A stretch of 56,298 bases of DNA, filler included, from Platydemus manokwari (Eukaryota): the NCBI GenBank assembly GCA_037951405.1. It is 5 parts of 5 records of this genome, joined end to end, with 100 filler letters (N's around TTAATTAATTAA, not from the genome) between each part and the next. Parts side by side here need not be neighbours in the genome. Positions count along the whole stretch, not along the records: positions 33,339 to 43,582 come from JBBMOY011139772.1; 4 more parts are not named here. One strand, given 5' to 3'. The notes under the pieces were generated by a model. That model did no database searches. It saw nothing but the letters and a program-made list of their open reading frames with translations, and was not told where the DNA came from. The translations under genes and the position numbers were made by a program. Position 1 is the first letter of the stretch, and every line of letters begins with the position of its first letter. Below are positions 33,339 to 43,582 of the stretch, piece after piece.

Positions 33339-34089
33339 TTCTTAAAGATTTTGGGATGATAATCGTTAGGCGAACTCACTTAAATCATAAGATACGCTTT
33401 CACACCATAGAATCAGAATGAAAAATTTAAAATACTGATGTTCAATGGAAAATATTCCAAGATGAAATCTTTTTGACAAGTTATGGAATTGAATCCCGAA
33501 TTACGGCGGTATTCAACGCGCTCTTAATTTCGCTTCATGTGTCTCAACTTAATCAATACTGCTATTAATAATAGACATCAAAGTTTGAAAATTATATATA
33601 TTTTTAGTAAATTCAACACGAAAACATAAATTCTGAATACAATGATAATTTTTTAAAAATTCAGACCAAATCTAAAAATATATTTTTAATCAATACATTA
33701 AGTACATAATTCGACCCTCAAGTAATATCCCAATCATCTTTTTGTCATTCAATAAATCTTGGTTTTATTCAATCGAAATCTTTTGATTTTGTCAGGTTCA
33801 TCTTATAAAATTAATTTCTTAGTTTCAAAAGATTCTGTGATACCATTAATTTTTATTCTTCAGACTTTTCCAAGATTAACACATCTGTGGCTTGTCTATT
33901 AAAATGTTTGCTTAGATCACGTTTGGCAGATAACATTTTGCAACAATATTTGATAATTTAGTTTACGTACAAATCTATTTGATAAACATTTGTGATAATC
34001 TAGTGAGTTGGGTCGCTAGCTATTTTTAATTAGTATTGGAATGTCGTTACGATTTATCTAACGAGGTTGAAAATTTTATGGAAATTGTT

Positions 34090-35560
34090 ATAATATTTCC
34101 AATCACTTCAATGTCAGATCGTGCTAGATACACATACATATACATTAGAGTTCAGAAGAGTATTTTAAATTGTGTTCTCGTTTTGTTTATAAACCTCAAT
34201 ATATCTCAATTGTTTACCAGATCCTAAGTTTAAAAGTTGTTAAGCGAAAATTGTTTTTAGTAATTTGTTTAGATGTTGGTTATTCTAAAAATGAGTGAAT
34301 AAATTTCAAACTGACTTTGAAATTCGATCTTATCGGCTACAATGTTGAAATAAATGTTGTGGTAAGATAAAAATGGAAAAGAGACAGAAAATATTTTCTG
34401 TTGTGGCTCAAAAAACTCAAAATATGTTTATCCAGAAGCCTTCTTTTTTCGACATGTCAATTCAGGATCGAGATAGATAGTTCTAAACAATCAGAAATTT
34501 TGCTTTATTTTATCAAATTGAGCTATTTTTTGCGTTTGATTTTCTGCGGACAAAAACGAAGAATTGATCTTGAATAATGAAATAGAGATAGAGATAAAAA
34601 GGATATTCAAGATTGTATAGAGTATTTTTTTAGACAATAACGTTATTAAGCTTTGTAGATCGATTTGGAACTCGCTTTTAATAGCAGTTCTCGAGAAATA
34701 ATCTGTATAAATGTGCTTAGACTCTCGGAAATTAACAAGAGAACTGAGAAATTAACATTTCCAATAACTGATATTCGAACGTTACTGATCCCATATTTCT
34801 TCCTCTGCTAAGATATCCGGAGCTGAAAAGAAATTGAAATGGTCAAATGAGTGGCAGGAAATATCGACAATGAATTGTCTATGACACCATTTTAGTGTTT
34901 ATAGATGATGATGATATTTGTTACCGACTTATGATTTGCAATAATACAAACATTTTTGTTTTTCCAGGACAAATGATAGTCCCTAAAAGACTATTGCGTT
35001 ACAAGAAAGAACCTTTTGGCAATTCATAAATTTACTAGGTAACTTAAGTATTATTTAGTGGTAAAATGTTTCTCATTCGCATTTATCACAAGCCCTTTAG
35101 GTACACGGTTAGACCAGAAAATTTGATACTACTTTGAAAAAGGTTTCGAGTTCGAGCTTAAATATGAAAACAAAATTGAGCAAGGGAATCCAGATGGACT
35201 TTCAGTTTCAAGTGGAGATGTCTGTCCCAATATCATCAAGGAACTATGAACTATGTTGACCACGATCTGCGAAAAATTTAACAAACTGATACTGCCATTA
35301 TTTCTATTTTAAAATGGATACAGGATATTAAAGGAGTCAATACCGCAGCCTAACAAGTAAATTATCCTTCCACTTTTGCACTTTATGAAAATGCAAGATT
35401 TTTGAAGAAATCTTGGTTTGTAGTGTCCCTGTAAAGAATCATTTCGTTACGACAAAGTCCCATTCGCGGAAATTAACGAAATAATTTCATGACGAGCAAT
35501 GCCATATTGACAGAATCTGTCAAATATTTACTTATGACCATTTACGGGAGAGTTTATGAC
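34090..35560 (+). mobile_element. Older, heavily deleted Ty3/Gypsy pol relic, copy 3
   Basis: LDNNVIKLCRSIWNSLL...MCLDSRKL (about 34630-34735), KKLKWSNE (about 34830), DYCVTRK...LAIHKFT...KYYLV (about 34990-35060), FEFELKY...QGNPDGLS (about 35145-35205). Confidence 0.75.
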
Positions 35561-36484
35561 TAAAACTATTTATCCGTTAGTTATTGAGGGTAGATTAAGT
35601 GAATAATTAACATTAGTATCGCTTACCCGGCAAAATGAAACCAGTATTTCCAATTCGATCTTCATCTGGTGAATCTACAGATAATAATTTTGACGGTGTA
35701 GTATTCCAAAATCGATATTAACTAATCGGTGGTAAAATTTTTATAGAATAAATATGAAAAAATTAGCTATACACAAATTATTTTCTCCATATAAGAATCA
35801 TGATACAAGTTGTAATATAGACCAGCTGCAATGTCATACCCTGAAATTATATACTTATCATTATAAATAATCATTATCATTATATATTTCTTCATGTTCT
35901 ATATTACTATTATATACTCTCAATTTCCTTTTTTATTTAGTTTATGCCTTATAAGAAAATAAATTATCAAAGACTAACTATAAATAAATAAATAACTGTA
36001 TTAAAAATAATAATATAAACATGAGTGAACAAAAATTTCAAATTTTTAATAAAATACTTAAGTTTTCAAAAGTCTCCAATGTAAAATTAAAATTTGCAAA
36101 TTATGATGCTTTTATTAATAACAACAAAGAACGAAATTATTTCGTTAATGAAAGAAGTGAATTCGTTAATATGATAGAATGTAATTTTTTATCTATTGAT
36201 TTTGGTTGCAAATGCTATCGATTTACTAACCTCAGAGTTCATTGAACGACGATGCACCAGATCACCTAATTTATTTATATTAACAATTTTTACCTCTCCC
36301 CCGCAATAATTATAAGACGATTATTAACAAGACGTTAGCAATTAAAATCAGTCTCTAAAATTATTAGACAGATAACTTTGGTTTTATCTTTGTCTCTCTC
36401 CAGCAGCTTTGAATTTCCTAGATTATCTTTGATTTTGCATATGATTGATTCAAGCAAATCAATGAAATAATTTATCTGATCTGA

Positions 36485-36553
36485 TTTATTTTATGGGTCC
36501 ATATATTTTTCAGTATTTATTATACTGAAAAATATATGGACCCATAAAATAAA
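36485..36553. repeat. Perfect 32-bp inverted repeat with 5-nt spacer
   Basis: tttattttatgggtccatatatttttcagtat - ttatt - atactgaaaaatatatggacccataaaataaa. Confidence 0.95.
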
Positions 36554-37800
36554 ATATATAACGTGCTTACAAACGAATATTTCAAATGAAAACAATTTGG
36601 TTTTACAGTCCGAATTCGAATGAAAGGCTTATGTGTCTGTTGCCCTCGTCTCTTATTGGGTCCGAAACGTTCAATAGTTGCAATATATAGGAGTATGCAA
36701 TTGATTTTTAAAATTAAAATTAGTATTTAAAATACAGACTAATTACATGAGTTTCTTTTCTCCTGGGCTGAACAATGAATGAAACCTGGACAATAAACAG
36801 AATTGGCATGAAACACATTAATCGCAAACTTGAGGTTCTTCTGATAGAACGAGCCATAATCACTGTTTGGCTGTCTTATTTTATTGTTTTCCAAATGGGG
36901 ATTTTAGGATATTTCACCCCTCCTGGATATTCGTTGATTCTTCTAGATTTTTAATTTAATGGATTATAATTTATTTCCTCCATAATTTTCGTGATATTTT
37001 GAATAGACGGATTAAGTATTCGTTTGAATCTGTGATATTCTATGCCAGGGGATTATTTATGAAATTTTATATTTTCTTAATATTTTTTAAATATTTTAAT
37101 TAAACTTATAATTTTAGGCAAACAATATTTGAGTTTATTCTTTCGAAATTGAATTATGAAAATGTACGTAAAATAAAATTAATCGATTATTTTTAATCGA
37201 TAATATGAGGTATTCATTTTATACATCAATTGTAAATTTTTATCTAAAATGTCATAATACTGAAACATAGAATACCGATCGATTATCAGCAGTTATAATA
37301 ACAAATCTAGATCATTGGCATACAAATATCAACACGGAAAACTTATTTTAACAATTTTGAAATCGATTGTCAACTCTATAATAACAAATCTGAAATAAGT
37401 TCAAAATCTCAACAAAGGACGAAATAAATTCATTAACGAAGGAACTGAATTCGTTGATCAAAAGGTTCTGCGTCTGGCTCAATCTTTTGTTGCCATTCGA
37501 GATCGATTTTGGTTGCCTTTCAGGATCTCCAGAATTATGCGATGCCAATTTCGTTGAAAGTGCAAACTATTCTAATATGGCCATTTTTTATAAATCACTG
37601 AGAATTATTTAAACAAACGTATAATTTTAGAATCTTTCAACAAGTATCCAATTATAAAATTGTTAGTTAGTTTACAAAATATTTACGATGACGATAGCAA
37701 GTTGATTTAACAGTAAAATGAAATATAAAAAATATGAAAAATGAAATATTGGCGGCTTGCATGTTGACCATGCATTGGGATTAGATTCCGAGAATGTCTA

Positions 37801-38154
37801 TGTCATGGAATAATGGAAGAGAAGGAGGAAGATATAGATGTAAAGAAGACATAACGAAGTTTTACAGAAGATATATAAGAGAAAATGTGAAAATATAGAG
37901 AAGATATAAAAAGATTTAGAGATGATATAAAGAGATTATAAAGTAGAAAAGAAATTTTTATATAGATTAATATTTAGAGAATTTATAAAGAGATTATTAA
38001 GGATTCAGCGAAAACCAAAGATTTTAAAGAAAGGTAGATGTGAGGGTTTATAATGAATTGAGATTTTAAAGTCAGACTTTCTTAAAATATCAATCTGCCG
38101 GTGACTTTTTAGTTCGTTTCCAATACGTCCTTTATTAAATACTAATCACTTACA
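37801..38154 (+). mobile_element. Probable solo LTR (354 bp)
   Basis: Begins TGTCA and ends TTACA. Flanks gtcta / gtgta (4 of 5 TSD match). Purine-rich body with TATA-like tataaa and an ATTAAA about 15 nt before the end. Confidence 0.45.
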
Positions 38155-38981
38155 GTGTATATGATTTCCTCTTTTTTTAAACCAATCGAATTATGTTCCA
38201 GGAATTTTATGGGCAAAGCTTCATCAATCTTGTGAGAATATCAAATTGAATTCAATTTGACTTAGTATAGAATTTAATTTATATTGAATTTGATTTTAAA
38301 TTGAATTTAATTAGAATGGAATGTCGAGTCTTTTCAGTTCGTTTTCGATTCGGGTTACAAATCTCATGGGTAAGACAAGTATGATTGTCTTGTTCAGTGA
38401 TGGATAATTGAAAACTGATGACAATTTAGAAATTTTTGATTGGCTATTTGTTTGGGTATAGATGAAATATTTGTGTGAGTGTTCCATCTTAAAGGATTTC
38501 TTTGTAGTTTTTAATCTTGCTTGATTTCCGGTCGTTTTTGATGTTCTCGATAATACATTACGAGTAACAAACAATCTAAATTATTACTGGAATCATCAAA
38601 TTAAAGGATGCAAGAACTCATACATTTTCAAAACAGGAAAATATGATGTACAATAATTATTTAATCAATATTCGGGTTGAATAACTTTTAACTGTATCAA
38701 ATATTTTGTGTTCAGGATTTACCAATATTGTCGTTAATATCAACTTACCATGTTTATCATTTTTTTAAATGAATTGTCTTTCTTTAGGCATTCCCTCTGT
38801 ACAGACAATTTACCATTGATTTTAAAATGGTTTAAATTTACAACTCTCAGTTCATTCAGTATTTTCACAAATACGTGAAAATTTAAAAACTTAAAGATTA
38901 ACAGGTACAATAAATTCGATGGCACATAGAACAACATAGATACAATAAATAAAAAAATAAACCACCTTTGGTTGAAAAATG

Positions 38982-39040
38982 GGCCCTATTTCGGCCCTCC
39001 ATAGGCCTCATCAGTATCCCGGTTCAGAGATAAATAGTAC
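38982..39040 (-). ncRNA. Type III hammerhead ribozyme, apparently intact
   Basis: Minus strand: CUAU-U | UAUCUC-UGAACC-GGGAUA | CUGAUGA | GGCC-UAUGGAG-GGCC | GAA-AUAG. It has the complete core, a 6-bp stem I, a 4-5-bp stem II, a 4-bp stem III (CUAU/AUAG) and NUH = AUU. Confidence 0.88.
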
Positions 39041-39107
39041 GATCTCTCGGATCCTTCAATAACGATGGGTGCAATGATGATTATAGTGGTTTTGTGATTG
39101 GAATAGT

Positions 39108-39198
39108 GTTATATTTCGGCCTTCCATGGGCCTCATCCAGGTTTTATTGCCAATACAAGTTTCAAAGTTCATTTTCATTTTGATAAAATCCTATATAT
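39108..39198 (-). ncRNA. Second, degenerate hammerhead ribozyme (type III-like topology)
   Basis: Minus strand: UAUAU-A | GGAUUUUAU...(about 35 nt)...AUAAAACC | UGGAUGA | GGCC-CAUGGAA-GGCC | GAA-AUAUA. Stem II is nearly identical to the first copy, but the CUGAUGA box is altered. Confidence 0.6.
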
Positions 39199-39211
39199 AT
39201 ATATATATATA
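39192..39211. repeat. (TA)10 microsatellite
   Basis: Directly visible; abuts the second hammerhead. Confidence 0.95.
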
Positions 39212-40626
39212 AACTCTAAGGAAAAAGAGGAAAATGACTACAAAAAAGTATAAGCGAATTCTAAACACAAGCCGAATTAAACCACATCAGCTTTCATAAA
39301 ATCAATTCTCCTCTCACCTCCTTTTCATCCAGTGGCATTAGTTCCCAACACTGGTTGTTCTAATTCTCCTGAGCATTGCAGCTTCAAAACATGACTTAAT
39401 TGCAGTAGCATATTTGTTATTTTCGTTTATAATTGTACAGATAATAAATACTATTTGATTATAATTGCATTTTTTATCACAACACTATCTTAAAAATGTA
39501 ACCTACACTTTATGTAGTGCTAAGGGTCAGATATTGGTGGAATTACTTAATGAAATTTTTTATTTAAATTTATTTCAAAAAATAACGAACTTTTATTATT
39601 TTTTTAACGTGACGCCTAAAATCTAATCTTAAAGATAGTCATTAAAAATTAATATTTTTGAAATGATTTTGTTTTAATAAGTAATAATTAGAATTTATAA
39701 ACCATTAATTATTTGTATATATTTAATAAATAACTAATTAATTTTTTCTATTTAAAATATCCTAAATTTTCAGAAATCTATTTTTAGTATTTATAATATT
39801 ATAAAAATATTCAAATATTTAATAAACAATTTAAATGAATTAAAAAAATTATAATTAAATTTTATTAAATTATACTTTGAAACAAATATTTAATTAAAAT
39901 TAAAAAATCAATTTTAAAATCGTATAATATTTATTTATTTTTTAAAAAATATTTTAAAATGCATTAAAAATTTTTATTGCTTGAATCCATATTTTTACAT
40001 GTTTTTATTGATTTTTATTGGTTTTTTTGTAAATATCTCTATTTTCTTGGTTTCATTGTGACATTCATCGAGCTCGACTTTAATTGAAAGCACCATGTGG
40101 GATTTTGGGATTTTGACTTTTTAATCCTTGTAAATTTATGATATCGATTTATTATTAATTTTCTCGTAATTAAATACAGGCTCACTGTATGAAAATAGAA
40201 TTTCGATTTGTTACAGTAATAAATATAATATCCTAAATTAAAAGGAAATAAGTAAAAATTTCTAATAATTCTTTACAGTTGAATGAAAATGAGGAATGAA
40301 ATTTTAAAATTTTTCTGAAAATGGATAAAAGGCTGTAGTGTTTTATCATATGCCTAATATCATTTCTAGAACTTTAAAAATACCTATTTTTTCTTAATTT
40401 TAGTTTTTTATATAGATTTTCAATGTTTTTTATCAGTTTTAATGAGTCATCATTTTTATGAATATATAATTTATAAATTACGGAATTTCTGGTTATTTCA
40501 AGATATTGCTAATTTGAAATTTAATTAAAATTTTCCAAATAATAATAATATTTTGTTTAAATAATTAGATTATTTTAATTAAATAATTTCTCTGGATTTT
40601 AATTTTTTCAAATAAATAAATAAATA

Positions 40627-42142
40627 ATGAAAAATTCTACCACTAATGAAAATGTAAAAGAAGGCGCTATATTTACTGATATTAAATCCAACCATTGGGT
40701 AGTGGGTCAATTACTTGGGCAAGGGGGTTTTGGATCCATTTATACAGCTCGAGATGTGTTATCCGATGAATTTAAATTTGTTATCAAAATTGTAAGTCAA
40801 CTTTACTATCGCTTTATGAATTAATTATGAATTAATTAATTTTTAAGGAACCAAAATCAAATGGAACTATTCGTGTTGAGACTGATTTTTACATGCGTTT
40901 TTGTGAAGAGAAAATGAGTTCGTTTAATTAAAATACTAGATTTTTTGTTATTGATTTATATCAGTTACTAGTTGGATTAATGAAAATAAATTAAAATCCC
41001 TTGGAATCTCACGGTATATTAGCCATGGCATAGAAGAAATAGGTGATTATAGATTTCTCATAATGGAGAGATATGGCGATGATTTACACAGAATTTTAAT
41101 GAAAAATAATTTGAGTCAGAAGTGTCTGTTTCAGATAGCTATTAATATTGTAATATTCTTTGGACAAACATTTTAGTTTTAATATTTTTTTAGCTCGATA
41201 TATTGGAATATTTTCATAGCAAAGGATATTCTCATAGGGACATAAAGGCAATGAATATATTGCAAGGATACCAATCAACTCAAGTAACTTAATTATATAA
41301 TTAGATTTCAATTTATTCATGTTTAGATTTATTTAGTCGATTTCGGATTGACTCATAAATTCAATTTGGACGGGAAACACAAGCCCGAAGTAATTGATTC
41401 AAAGATTAAGCATAGCGGTACATTAGAATTTTGTTCAAGAGATTCACATAGGGGTTTGTTGAATTAATAATTATCTATTATTATCTATTATTATTATTAT
41501 TTTTTCCAGGATTATATTCCAGTCGTCGAAGTGATATCGAAAGCCTTATGATTAACCTAATATTTTGGCTCACTTGGGATAAAAAGAATGACTTTTCTGA
41601 ACGAGTTGGATACGGAAAACTGCCATGGTTGAGTTACATCAAAGGTTTGTCAATGGTCTGAATATGCAACGTATAAATTTATGGTTCTAGATAAGGGAAA
41701 TCAACGACGTAGTCCGAAAGTTTTGAAACAAGTTTCGAAATCCAAAGAGAAGTACATTGGTGAACCGAATTTATTAATTGAAAGTGTTGGACTAAACAAT
41801 CATTCGTGGACTAATGGTAAGTTTATTCATGATCGTATTTTTTAATTCCGTGATTTTAACCGGAAAAATCAAATTGAATTTTATTAACAGAATATTAAAT
41901 AATCTATATTTATCATGATATATTAATTAGATTTCGTGAATCTTGTCACCTATGTTTCCAAATTGAAATATTCTGAACGACCGGATTATGATGATATTCG
42001 TCAACAATTTGCCAAGATAATTTGTTTAACTAATAATCAATTGAATAAATCGTCAATCGATTTCAATGATTTCCGAAATATAGATTGGAACGATTCTACT
42101 TTGTCATCAACCCTCTCAAATGAAACAGTATCTCATTTGTAA
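40627..42142 (+). CDS. VRK1: Vaccinia-related kinase (VRK family, CK1 group), 8 exons
   Basis: Exons 40627-40791, 40848-40917, 40965-41149, 41194-41283, 41327-41453, 41510-41644, 41691-41817 and 41931-42142 splice in frame. Motifs: LGQGGFGSIY, VIKIEPKSNG, YRFLIMERYGDDL, HRDIKAMNIL, YLVDFGL, HSGTLEFCSRDSHRG, SRRSDIE, KLPW, LKYSERPDY. The symbol is family-level. Confidence 0.9.
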
Positions 42143-43510
42143 CTCGGGTTTCGATTCAAAATGATGTATCAAAAATGATATTCCAAAATCCAAAATGAAT
42201 TTTCCGAAAGAGGGTATGAACAAGAAACCATAAAGACCCAAAATCCCACTCATGTCAACTTCATATTGTGATTGTAAATACTTACAGCTTAATTAGCACT
42301 TCTTTATTTTATAAAAGTCAAAACTGCATTACCAGAGTAAATTTGAATTCAGATTATGATAAAATAAAGTTCATATTGATCTGATTTTTGAGGGAAAAAT
42401 TATTTATAGATTTTTTATTTAATTCCTTAATATATTATTGATATTTTTTCCCTTGTTTTTAATATATTAAAGTTAATTATTAATTTTCAAAGGCAACAAA
42501 GGCTCATTGCAATTGATACATATGAAGTTAATAAAATAAATATGGTTATGAGTTACAAAAATTATAACATAATTTATATTTAAATTGAGTATTAACACAA
42601 AACTTGTAAATGTTTATGAGCGAGCTAAAAAATGATACAAATAATAGCAATTAAATGAAAATATTTTAAAAGTTCTCATCGATTTGTGCCTTAGAACATG
42701 ACATATATATCACAGCAATTCCAATAATAATTATTACATAGTCTTTGTGAAAATCCAGTAAATAGGTGAGAAATAAATATTATTAAATTATTATCAAAAA
42801 CGTATGTTAAAATATGTGCGGGCTGATCATTAACAATTTTTCAAAGAAGTCATTGGAATTTTCGAAAGTTAACATTACTTTACGGATGTGGAAAAACATT
42901 AATTGTAATCCTTAGCTATATTAATATTTATTATACTATGTATAAAATTTATTATTAATACATTGAAGTTGGCCTTAACTTCATATTTTTACTAAAAAAA
43001 ATAAAATAGGCTTGAAAATAGTAAATTAAATAAATATTTTGCATTTTGAAAAGAGAATGATTTCATTTCAATGAATTCATCTGTTTAGTTAAACAATTTC
43101 ATGATTTTAAATGGATTGCATACTTAGTTTAATTTCTTTGTGCCAAATCATATAGAAAACCAAACAAAAGTAAAAAAGGATTTAAAAAAAATTATTTTCT
43201 TAAACAGTTATTTGAAATAACAATAAAAAATTATTTAAACTCTGTAAACACAATGAATGTTTGTTTAAACTTTTCAGTGTGACCTGTACATTTAGAAATC
43301 TAAATGACCAGATGAACCGTGATATTAATAAGTGGTTTTCGAGGATCAATGAATTACAACCATTTTTGTCTGTTTTGTGTACAAAAATATAACGAGTGTT
43401 TTTCATTCATTGGTTATCATAAATTCTCTTTAGAGCTAAAGTTAAGAAAAGGGGTCCTACAATAAAATTATGAAGATGTCGAGGGATCGAAAAAATCTAT
43501 ATAGTTTATT

Positions 43511-43582
43511 TATTAGGGTGAACCAAAAGTTCTTTCCGATTTTTTATTAAAAATTTAAACATAATTTTACAACAAATGGAAA
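43511..43582. mobile_element. Mariner-type element terminus cut by gap
   Basis: TA followed by TTAGGGTGAACCAAAAGTTCTTTCCG resembles mariner TIRs and lies at a contig end. Confidence 0.55.

What the first reader, a model, noticed from the sequence alone, without database searches (positions are those of the whole stretch)
39033..39191. Two tandem hammerheads bracket a 159-nt RNA: candidate retrozyme or viroid-like circular RNA unit
Seen: a second hammerhead-like motif lies about 125 nt upstream on the same strand with an almost identical stem II (GGCC-CAUGGAA-GGCC versus GGCC-UAUGGAG-GGCC) but a different stem I. The predicted cut sites (after 39192 and after 39033) delimit 159 nt of noncoding RNA. 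Known: retrozymes are non-autonomous retroelements whose paired hammerheads excise a monomer that circularises. Inference: a small non-autonomous ribozyme element, not a simple tandem duplication because stems I and III differ. The upstream core here is mutated (UGGAUGA or CUGGAUGA), so this copy may be half-dead.
Basis: partly seen in the sequence, partly recalled or inferred. Interest (0 to 1): 0.8.

Follow-up and report, generated by a model that had tools for sequence, protein, structure and literature searches.

The report
Truncated hammerhead-ribozyme repeat element copy

Summary
The two motifs are real and lie on the minus strand, 125 nt apart. The downstream one (39040-38983) is a complete type III hammerhead. 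It has an intact CUGAUGA/GAAA core, a 6-bp helix I, a 4-bp helix II, a 7-position helix III with one mismatch, and a cut site after 39033. The upstream one is not a mutated ribozyme. It is the edge of the element. Contigs of the one public run that holds this DNA show a family of at least 258 distinct contigs lying on about 38938-39137. Family likeness stops at 39137. At least 20 other copies run on from there into a full helix I and an intact CUGAUGA. The "extra G" is therefore a junction with unrelated flank, and the proposed upstream cut site (39192) and the 159-nt unit are not supported. In intact copies the cut-to-cut distance would be about 125 nt. The ribozyme belongs to a subclass (loop 1 UGNNCC, loop 2 NAUGGAN) also found in bacterial or phage-like contigs and in circular viroid-like contigs. 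A VRK-like kinase gene 1.5 kb away suggests an animal host, where repeat-borne hammerheads are normally type I. Best reading: a dead, truncated copy of a retrozyme-like family. No RNA data were available.

The parts
38983..39040 (-). Complete type III hammerhead (HH-b). Helix III is 39040-39034 with 38989-38983. The cut site is after U39033. Helix I is 39032-39027 with 39020-39015. Loop 1 UGAACC is 39026-39021. The core CUGAUGA is 39014-39008. Helix II GGCC/GGCC is 39007-39004 with 38996-38993. Loop 2 UAUGGAG is 39003-38997. GAA is 38992-38990.
   Evidence: Rfam RF00008 gives a full-length alignment at 24.2 bits. Subclass model R1 gives 64 bits, E 4e-19. The parse is identical in architecture to 16 metagenome hammerheads. 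This is the region of highest family depth.
39041..39113 (-). Spacer between the two hammerhead motifs. It is family sequence and non-coding. Its first 6 nt (39113-39108), together with A39114 of the upstream remnant, make up the 3' strand of that remnant's helix III (AUAUAAC, 39114-39108).
   Evidence: Family contigs align through it at 80-84% identity (table 8, records 2-7). It contains no ORF.
39114..39137 (-). Remnant of the upstream hammerhead (HH-a): GAUGA, helix II GGCC/GGCC, loop 2 CAUGGAA and GAAA only. It lacks C3 and U4 of the core, helix I, the cut site and the 5' strand of helix III.
   Evidence: Pattern match. Family likeness ends at 39137, and 20 contigs continue there with other sequence that encodes the missing half (table 7). 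R1 scores it 33 bits only through the core and helix II, with helix I collapsed and UG in place of CU.
38938..38982 (-). Tail of the element downstream of HH-b. The boundary is fuzzy, between about 38925 and 38940. Some other copies continue further with a different, coherent sequence.
   Evidence: Summed depth is 826 in bin 38941-38971, against 36.5 in 38910-38940 and about 9.8 outside (table 2). There are loose ends at 38938 (8 contigs, agreement 0.75).
39138..39192 (-). Flank, not part of the element.
   Evidence: Depth falls to the single-copy level of 9.5. The stretch folds no better than shuffles. (TA)10 lies at 39192-39211.

Best explanation
The locus is a roughly 200-nt, non-functional fragment of a multi-copy, non-coding, retrozyme-like element. 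The element carries pseudoknot-class type III hammerheads in direct orientation, about 125 nt apart.

In intact copies a transcript of the minus strand would fold a hammerhead at each repeat and cut itself after position 17. That would release a monomer of about 125 nt with 5'-OH and 2',3'-cyclic phosphate ends. The 5' part of the monomer comes from one ribozyme and its 3' end from the next, so together they can re-form a complete hammerhead. By analogy with animal retrozymes, the monomer would be closed into a circle, mainly by the host RtcB-type tRNA ligase. It would then be copied back into DNA by a reverse transcriptase supplied in trans and inserted with arbitrary ends.

At this locus the element begins inside the upstream ribozyme, so only the downstream ribozyme (cut after 39033) is whole. 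A transcript could be cut once, but no monomer can be excised.

Shown: the ribozyme anatomy, the multi-copy family, the truncation point, the linkage of two intact hammerheads at other loci, and stronger conservation of the ribozyme than of the spacer.

Inferred: self-cleavage, circularisation and retrotransposition.
For: Anatomy. HH-b has every core residue and three helices.

Subclass. HH-b shares all features of 10 aligned metagenome hammerheads that the search pattern did not impose: U16.1, the C-G pair closing helix I, and loop 1 U..CC. In those sequences helices I and III co-vary: 99.3% of cells are paired, 9 pairs change on both sides, and 0 of 500 shuffles reach this. Rows were chosen for pairing, so this is only indicative.

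Family. 258 contigs of run X1 lie on about 38938-39137 at 80% likeness or more. Summed depth reaches 3690 over 39003-39033 against about 9.8 for the flanks. The peak is on the ribozyme and the spacer is lower (515-1195).

Differences between copies respect the structure. Where this copy has an A.G mismatch in helix III (39038), 87% of depth has C, giving C-G. At 38984 90% has A, turning U.G into U-A. At 39019 G>A turns U.G into U-A in helix I. Site 17 is A in 89% and U here, and both are allowed (table 3). No majority variant is listed inside CUGAUGA.

Truncation. 20 contigs run past 39137 into sequence whose reverse complement is a 6-bp helix I, a UGGUCC loop and CUGAUGA, preceded by GUCCUAUC (table 7). 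Compared with HH-b, that helix I carries a G-C to A-U exchange.

Context. The element has no ORF, about 42% GC in a 27% GC region, and lies in intergenic DNA 1.5 kb upstream of a VRK-like kinase gene.

Literature. Small tandem hammerhead repeats of low GC without LTR, PBS or PPT are the definition of animal retrozymes, and RtcB circularises them (PMC7229834).
Against: No RNA evidence exists. No RNA run holds the stretch, so transcription, cleavage and circles are untested.

Known animal retrozymes carry type I hammerheads, not type III (PMC7229834; preprint 10.64898/2026.07.22.740005).

The full-length family structure is unknown. It could be dimers or long arrays, and its true ends are not defined. 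De Bruijn contigs break at repeats, and only one contig shows a head-to-tail joint (about 122-nt period).

Within the locus the two units resemble each other only in the 26-nt core, and TRF finds no 125-nt period.

No convincing target-site duplication was found, and there is no reverse transcriptase in the 10-kb piece.

One period of this copy folds no better than shuffles (z +0.5). The hammerhead fold of HH-b (-10.4 kcal/mol) is not the predicted minimum (-14.3). This copy has a competing GGGCC/GGCCC hairpin.

The RF00008 score is below gathering.
Confidence: 0.68

Rival explanations
1. One reading: two hammerheads at this locus, the upstream one half-dead through a core insertion, cut after 39192 and after 39033 and release a 159-nt RNA that circularises.
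For: The two motifs and the CUG-GAUGA reading are real. An AU helix can be drawn from the (TA)n run.
Against: Family likeness ends at 39137, and other copies carry a normal helix I and CUGAUGA there. The proposed stems are flank and microsatellite. C3 and U4 are missing in any register. The stretch folds no better than shuffles.
Confidence: 0.03
2. An ordinary satellite or tandem repeat that happens to carry a relic hammerhead. It would be amplified and dispersed by DNA-level processes (unequal exchange, segmental movement) with no RNA-circle or reverse-transcription step.
For: The family is high-copy, with a head-to-tail joint in one contig. There is no TSD, poly(A) tail or RT nearby. Hammerhead satellites such as newt satellite 2 were first described this way (PMC6155905).
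Against: The ribozyme is far better conserved than the spacer, and the differences between copies keep the helices paired. Many contigs leave the family at different places into unlike sequence: 154 of 258 lie only partly on it and 105 loose-end sites are reported. That fits dispersed short copies such as this 1.6-unit fragment in unique intergenic DNA.
Confidence: 0.17
3. A fragment of a larger mobile element whose terminal or internal region holds the hammerheads. Candidates are a Penelope-like element terminal repeat or a SINE-like element. It would not be a free-standing small element.
For: Eight contigs continue coherently beyond 38938 and twenty beyond 39137, so the family is longer than this copy. 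Animal retrozymes have been tied to PLE terminal repeats (preprint 10.64898/2026.07.22.740005).
Against: PLE hammerheads are minimal type I motifs acting as dimers (PMC7229834, PMC7761336), while this one is a full type III. No RT or endonuclease ORF exists within 10 kb; the longest open frame is 89 aa. The 125-nt spacing is far too short for a coding element.
Confidence: 0.1
4. Integrated copies of an exogenous viroid-like or satellite-like circular RNA replicon.
For: The same hammerhead subclass sits in three circular-looking metagenome contigs of 1.47-1.63 kb. Two of them also carry a Hairpin-meta1 ribozyme on the other strand, and one has hammerheads on both strands.
Against: Likeness to those circles is limited to the 26-39-nt ribozyme. 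There are hundreds of diverged DNA copies in the genome, a ribozyme in one polarity only, and a unit far below the size of any known replicon.
Confidence: 0.02

Closest known systems
Animal non-LTR retrozymes (Cervera and de la Pena 2020, PMC7229834)
   Same: Both are small non-coding repeats of low GC with a hammerhead in each unit, in direct orientation. Both are multi-copy, lack LTR, PBS and PPT, and lie in intergenic DNA. The neighbour gene suggests an animal host here too.
   Different: Those carry type I hammerheads (helix I open) and units of mostly 150-450 bp. This one is type III (helix III open, helices I and II capped by loops), with a unit of about 125 nt. Arrays longer than two units are not shown here, and there are no RNA data.
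Plant LTR retrozymes (Cervera et al. 2016, PMC4918200)
   Same: Both have type III hammerheads in a dimeric, direct arrangement that brackets a non-coding RNA.
   Different: Plant elements have LTRs of about 350 bp, PBS, PPT, 4-bp TSDs, 600-1000-nt circles and more than 55% GC. Here the only repeated part is the ribozyme itself, the cut-to-cut distance is about 125 nt, GC is 42%, and the host looks like an animal.
Prokaryotic, phage and viroid-like type III hammerheads with a loop 1-loop 2 pseudoknot (Perreault et al. 2011, PMC3088659)
   Same: The architecture is identical: 6-bp helix I, 6-nt loop 1 U(G/A)NNCC, 4-bp helix II GGCC/GGCC and 7-nt loop 2 NAUGGAN. [quoted passage not shown]
   Different: Those are single or operon-linked motifs in GC-rich microbial DNA, or parts of 1.5-kb circles. 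This one is borne on an AT-rich eukaryotic repeat. There is no likeness outside the ribozyme.
Penelope-like element hammerheads
   Same: Both are hammerheads tied to retroelement repeats in invertebrate genomes.
   Different: PLE motifs are minimal type I with a very short helix III, and they lie in kb-scale coding elements.

Membership tests
Hammerhead ribozyme, type III (Rfam RF00008) | Conserved core C3-U4-G5-A6-N7-G8-A9, G12-A13-A14, an A15.1-U16.1 pair, and H at position 17 | tested here: met
   HH-b has CUGAUGA at 39014-39008, GAA at 38992-38990, the pair A38989-U39034 and U39033 at position 17. The upstream remnant fails this test because C3 and U4 are absent.
Hammerhead ribozyme, type III (Rfam RF00008) | Three helices, with helices I and II closed by loops and helix III open | tested here: met
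   Helix I has 6 bp plus a 6-nt loop. Helix II has 4 bp plus a 7-nt loop. Helix III has 6 of 7 positions paired.
Hammerhead ribozyme, type III (Rfam RF00008) | Score at or above the curated gathering threshold (48.5 bits) | tested here: not met
   The score is 24.2 bits. Five other members of the same subclass, including ones in ribozyme-paired circles, also score below it at 31.7-46.5 bits. The threshold therefore under-calls this subclass.
Hammerhead ribozyme, type III (Rfam RF00008) | Self-cleavage at the predicted site | not testable with these tools
   This needs in-vitro transcription or RNA ends from raw reads. No RNA run was available.
Animal non-LTR retrozyme | Type I hammerhead in each repeat unit | tested here: not met
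   The motif is type III.
Animal non-LTR retrozyme | Head-to-tail repeats, multi-copy, low GC, no LTR, PBS or PPT | tested here: inconclusive
   The family is multi-copy, with 258 contigs. Two hammerheads 125 nt apart occur here and in at least 20 other contigs. One contig has a head-to-tail joint. GC is 42%. Nothing is repeated beyond the ribozyme. Arrays longer than two units are not demonstrated.
Animal non-LTR retrozyme | Expressed as linear and circular monomer RNA | not testable with these tools
   No RNA run holds the stretch.
Plant LTR retrozyme | LTRs of about 350 bp each holding a type III hammerhead, with PBS, PPT and a 600-1000-nt unit | tested here: not met
   The direct repeat is only 26 nt in this locus (D12). 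The spacing is 125 nt. The neighbouring VRK-like gene points to an animal genome.
Penelope-like element terminal repeat | Minimal type I hammerhead next to an RT/GIY-YIG ORF | tested here: not met
   The motif is a full type III. There is no ORF above 89 aa in the 10-kb piece.

The most novel reading that the evidence does not exclude
An animal genome hosts an active retrozyme family built on a pseudoknot-class type III hammerhead, not the type I motif thought typical, and possibly required, for repeat-borne hammerheads in eukaryotes. Its monomer of only about 125 nt would be among the smallest ribozyme-made circular RNAs. The ribozyme is of the same subclass as those of phage or bacterial DNA and of free viroid-like circles, which would hint at exchange between these worlds.
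Probability: 0.3. Interest if true: 0.7.

Novelty: new variant of a known kind. Interest (0 to 1): 0.5.

Why it matters
Current classification pairs type I hammerheads with animal tandem retrozymes and type III hammerheads with plant LTR retrozymes. Perreault et al. (PMC3088659) even suggested that repeat propagation may need the type I layout. A high-copy type III repeat family in an animal would be a counter-example. It would show that the cut, ligate and reverse-transcribe life cycle does not depend on ribozyme topology. It would also supply a very small natural scaffold for making circular RNA.

The shared ribozyme subclass with microbial DNA and viroid-like circles bears on where such elements come from.

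For this particular locus the result is sobering. It is a dead fragment, and the apparent core mutation is only a truncation junction.

Tried and rejected
- Scans of viral contigs and genome contigs for the core pattern found nothing.
- A full-text search for the ribozyme strings found no paper.
- The look-up of sequencing runs gave one coded DNA-type run and no RNA run. Expression and circle junctions therefore could not be tested.
- Minimum-free-energy folding does not return the hammerhead fold for HH-b. The 200-nt element and one 125-nt period are no more stable than shuffles. This gives no support for a viroid-like rod from this diverged copy.
- TRF sees no 125-nt period, and a pairwise alignment of the two units shows likeness only in the 26-nt core.
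- The search for target-site duplications found only 5-6-mers. CAGGT at 38902 and 39138 is the only one that touches a boundary, and that is too weak to use.
- Pfam found nothing on the single exon pieces of the neighbour gene. PDB sequence search named them VRK-like.
- I did not run the large protein search to name the organism, because the cost was not justified.
- I did not build or fold a family consensus. The other copies are not held under any reference, and I kept to describing differences position by position.
- The depth sums are not copy numbers. I use them only as an order of magnitude.

Full report
**What is in the sequence**

The piece (33339-43582) is AT-rich eukaryotic DNA with 20-34% GC. 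It has no long ORF; the longest start-to-stop ORF is 87 aa and the longest stop-to-stop open frame 89 aa.

Read on the minus strand, 39040-38983 is a textbook type III hammerhead, which I call HH-b:
- Helix III is GUACUAU paired with AUAGGGC, with one A.G mismatch and one U.G pair.
- Position 17 is U39033, and the cut falls after it.
- Helix I is UAUCUC paired with GGGAUA, capped by UGAACC.
- The core is CUGAUGA.
- Helix II is GGCC paired with GGCC, capped by UAUGGAG.
- GAAA follows.

Rfam's RF00008 aligns it end to end at 24.2 bits. That is below the gathering score of 48.5, with E 0.16 for the piece and 0.0054 for the local 351 nt.

125 nt upstream lies a second copy of GAUGA-GGCC-CAUGGAA-GGCC-GAAA (39137-39114). 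The repeat finder reports the pair as a 26-nt direct repeat at 92% identity (D12). A pattern search finds exactly these two against 0.00 expected.

**What the upstream motif really is**

The single public run that holds this DNA (X1, coded, kept as Logan contigs) was laid on 38600-39500 at 80% likeness or more.

- Two contigs match the locus exactly, with its unique flanks, at depth of about 9.5-9.8.
- In total 258 contigs lie on the stretch, nearly all on about 38938-39137 only.
- Summed depth rises to 826 (38941-38971), 2019 (38972-39002) and 3690 (39003-39033). It then falls to 1195, 515, 740 and 241 across 39034-39157, and to 9.5 beyond.

These sums are not copy numbers, but they show a family of the order of hundreds of copies, best conserved over the ribozyme.

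Likeness to the family stops at 39137. There 20 contigs run on (median 61 letters, 80% agreement) with a sequence that, read on the minus strand, gives:
- GUCCUAUC, which is the 5' strand of helix III plus position 17;
- UGUCUC-UGGUCC-GAGGCA, which is a 6-bp helix I with a 6-nt loop;
- then CU joined to GAUGAG.

So other copies have a complete upstream hammerhead with a normal CUGAUGA. In this locus the element simply begins at the G of GAUGA. The CUG in front of it is flank.

The subclass model agrees. It scores the remnant at 33 bits only through the core and helix II, collapses helix I, and places UG where C3 and U4 should be. The cut site at 39192 and the 159-nt unit therefore fall.

With the same 6+6+6+2 layout, an intact upstream ribozyme would cut 20 nt before GAUGA. 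The cut-to-cut distance in intact copies is then about 125 nt.

**Evidence that the ribozyme is a selected structure**

Where this copy deviates from most others, the majority letter restores pairing (table 3):
- At 39038, 87% of depth has C on the RNA strand. This turns the A.G mismatch of helix III into C-G.
- At 38984, 90% has A, which turns U.G into U-A.
- At 39019, a minority G>A turns U.G into U-A in helix I.
- Position 17 is A in 89% and U here. Both are allowed.
- No majority difference is listed within CUGAUGA.

The helix I of the upstream ribozyme in other copies differs from that of HH-b by a G-C to A-U exchange.

This copy differs from the majority at some 15-17 listed places in 200 nt, so it is an old copy. 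It has also acquired a competing GGGCC/GGCCC hairpin. The hammerhead fold (-10.4 kcal/mol) is not the predicted minimum (-14.3). Such predictions ignore tertiary contacts.

**The ribozyme subclass**

A scan of metagenome contigs for CTGATGAGGCCNATGGANGGCCGAAA returned 19 loci. Sixteen of 18 distinct motifs parse as type III with the same layout as HH-b.

In ten gap-free aligned examples (A1), the invariant positions not imposed by the pattern are U16.1, the C-G pair closing helix I, and U....CC in loop 1. HH-b has all of them, and L015 has the very same loop 1, UGAACC. Helices I and III co-vary in that set. I chose rows that pair, so this result is only indicative. A covariance model of the set scores HH-b at 64 bits, E 4e-19.

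A stem I that is two base pairs longer than stem II is the feature Perreault et al. link to a loop-loop pseudoknot in type III hammerheads (PMC3088659). Here the likely contact is CC or UCC of loop 1 with GG or GGA of loop 2. That is an inference.

Members of this subclass also fall below RF00008's gathering score, at 31.7-46.5 bits. The low Rfam score of HH-b is therefore not an argument against it.

Most of the 19 loci are GC-rich (bacterial or phage-like). Three are different:
- L003 and L005 have 123-nt terminal overlaps, are about 1.63 kb as circles, and carry this hammerhead on one strand and a Hairpin-meta1 ribozyme (RF04190, above gathering) on the other.
- L014 also has a 123-nt terminal overlap, is about 1.47 kb as a circle, and has hammerheads on both strands.

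All three look like viroid-like circles. They share nothing with the window, or with each other, beyond the ribozyme.

**Context and host**

On the plus strand, open frames at 40624-40821 (with an ATG at 40627), 40955-41173, 41452-41658 and 41927-42139 read as successive exons of a VRK-like Ser/Thr kinase. Two of them match solved VRK structures: 40955-41173 matches VRK1 at 1.3e-7 and 40624-40821 matches VRK2 at 4e-5. The other two are assigned by eye from their translations only; they gave no Pfam match and were not run against solved structures. VRK kinases are an animal family by established knowledge. Together with short introns and very low GC, this suggests an invertebrate animal. The organism is coded and was not identified.

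The element lies in intergenic DNA about 1.5 kb upstream of that gene, on the opposite strand. No reverse transcriptase or other coding partner is present in the piece.

**How it most likely works**

Small, low-GC, non-coding repeats with a hammerhead per unit, and without LTR, PBS or PPT, are what Cervera and de la Pena define as animal retrozymes. These are transcribed and cut into monomers by the ribozymes, closed mainly by RtcB, and thought to be reverse-transcribed in trans, perhaps by Penelope-like elements (PMC7229834; preprint 10.64898/2026.07.22.740005).

I take the family here to work the same way, with a monomer of about 125 nt. The 5' part of the monomer (from one ribozyme) and its 3' end (from the next) can re-form a full hammerhead. 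In the majority letters the two helix III strands pair perfectly.

Copies with arbitrary start and end phases, like this 1.6-unit fragment, are what reverse transcription of a circular or multimeric template would give. Decay of a longer copy would look the same.

At this locus only one cut is possible and no monomer can form.

All steps after the anatomy are inferred. No RNA data exist for the stretch.

**Comparison and novelty**

Membership in "hammerhead, type III" is met on anatomy. Membership in "animal non-LTR retrozyme" fails on its type I criterion and is open on array length. Membership in "plant LTR retrozyme" fails on LTR, PBS, PPT, size and host. PLE terminal repeats fail on motif type and on the absence of an ORF.

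The literature held here places type III repeats in plants and type I repeats in animals. It mentions type III motifs in insects only as unpublished or atypical long-helix forms (PMC7761336, PMC7936874). No paper holds this ribozyme string.

I therefore rate the family a new variant of a known kind. The locus itself is a dead copy.

The size alone is not unprecedented, since the 2026 preprint lists type I consensus lengths of 51-972 bp.

**Limits**

- The family structure rests on one run of short contigs that break at repeats.
- Only one contig shows a head-to-tail joint (about 122-nt period).
- The element's true ends are unknown. Eight contigs go on coherently beyond 38938.
- No convincing target-site duplication was found.
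- I did not build a consensus.

Noticed in passing
window 36485-36553: A perfect 32-nt inverted repeat with a 5-nt loop (I1). It draws weak hits from several miRNA models, all far below gathering. It could be a MITE end or a hairpin-forming repeat.
   Followed up: no
window 40627-42139 (+): Four exon-like open frames of a VRK-like Ser/Thr kinase with short introns, starting at an ATG at 40627. Two of them have VRK1 and VRK2 as their best solved relatives; the other two were assigned by eye. Single exon pieces gave no Pfam hit.
   Followed up: partly
L003, L005 (whole contigs): Metagenome contigs with 123-nt terminal overlaps (about 1.63 kb as circles). They carry a type III hammerhead on one strand and a Hairpin-meta1 ribozyme (RF04190, 56-58 bits, above gathering) on the other. 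This is the layout of viroid-like or satellite circular RNAs. The two are unrelated to each other outside the hammerhead.
   Followed up: partly
L014 (whole contig): A circular-looking contig of about 1.47 kb with type III hammerheads on both strands (46.5 and 41 bits).
   Followed up: partly
L012 5377-5402 and 6166-6191: Two hammerheads of the same subclass lie 789 nt apart on one GC-rich (67%) contig. This is a tandem arrangement like those described for bacterial operons.
   Followed up: no
window 39192-39211 and 38924-38945: A (TA)10 microsatellite lies about 55 nt beyond the element's truncated end (39137), and a 10-11-nt local duplication (ACATAGATACA) lies at its other end.
   Followed up: no
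window 36117-36170 and 37405-37458: A 54-nt direct repeat at 81% identity, 1.3 kb apart, with internal inverted symmetry (D1 and I13). It may be another small repeat family.
   Followed up: no
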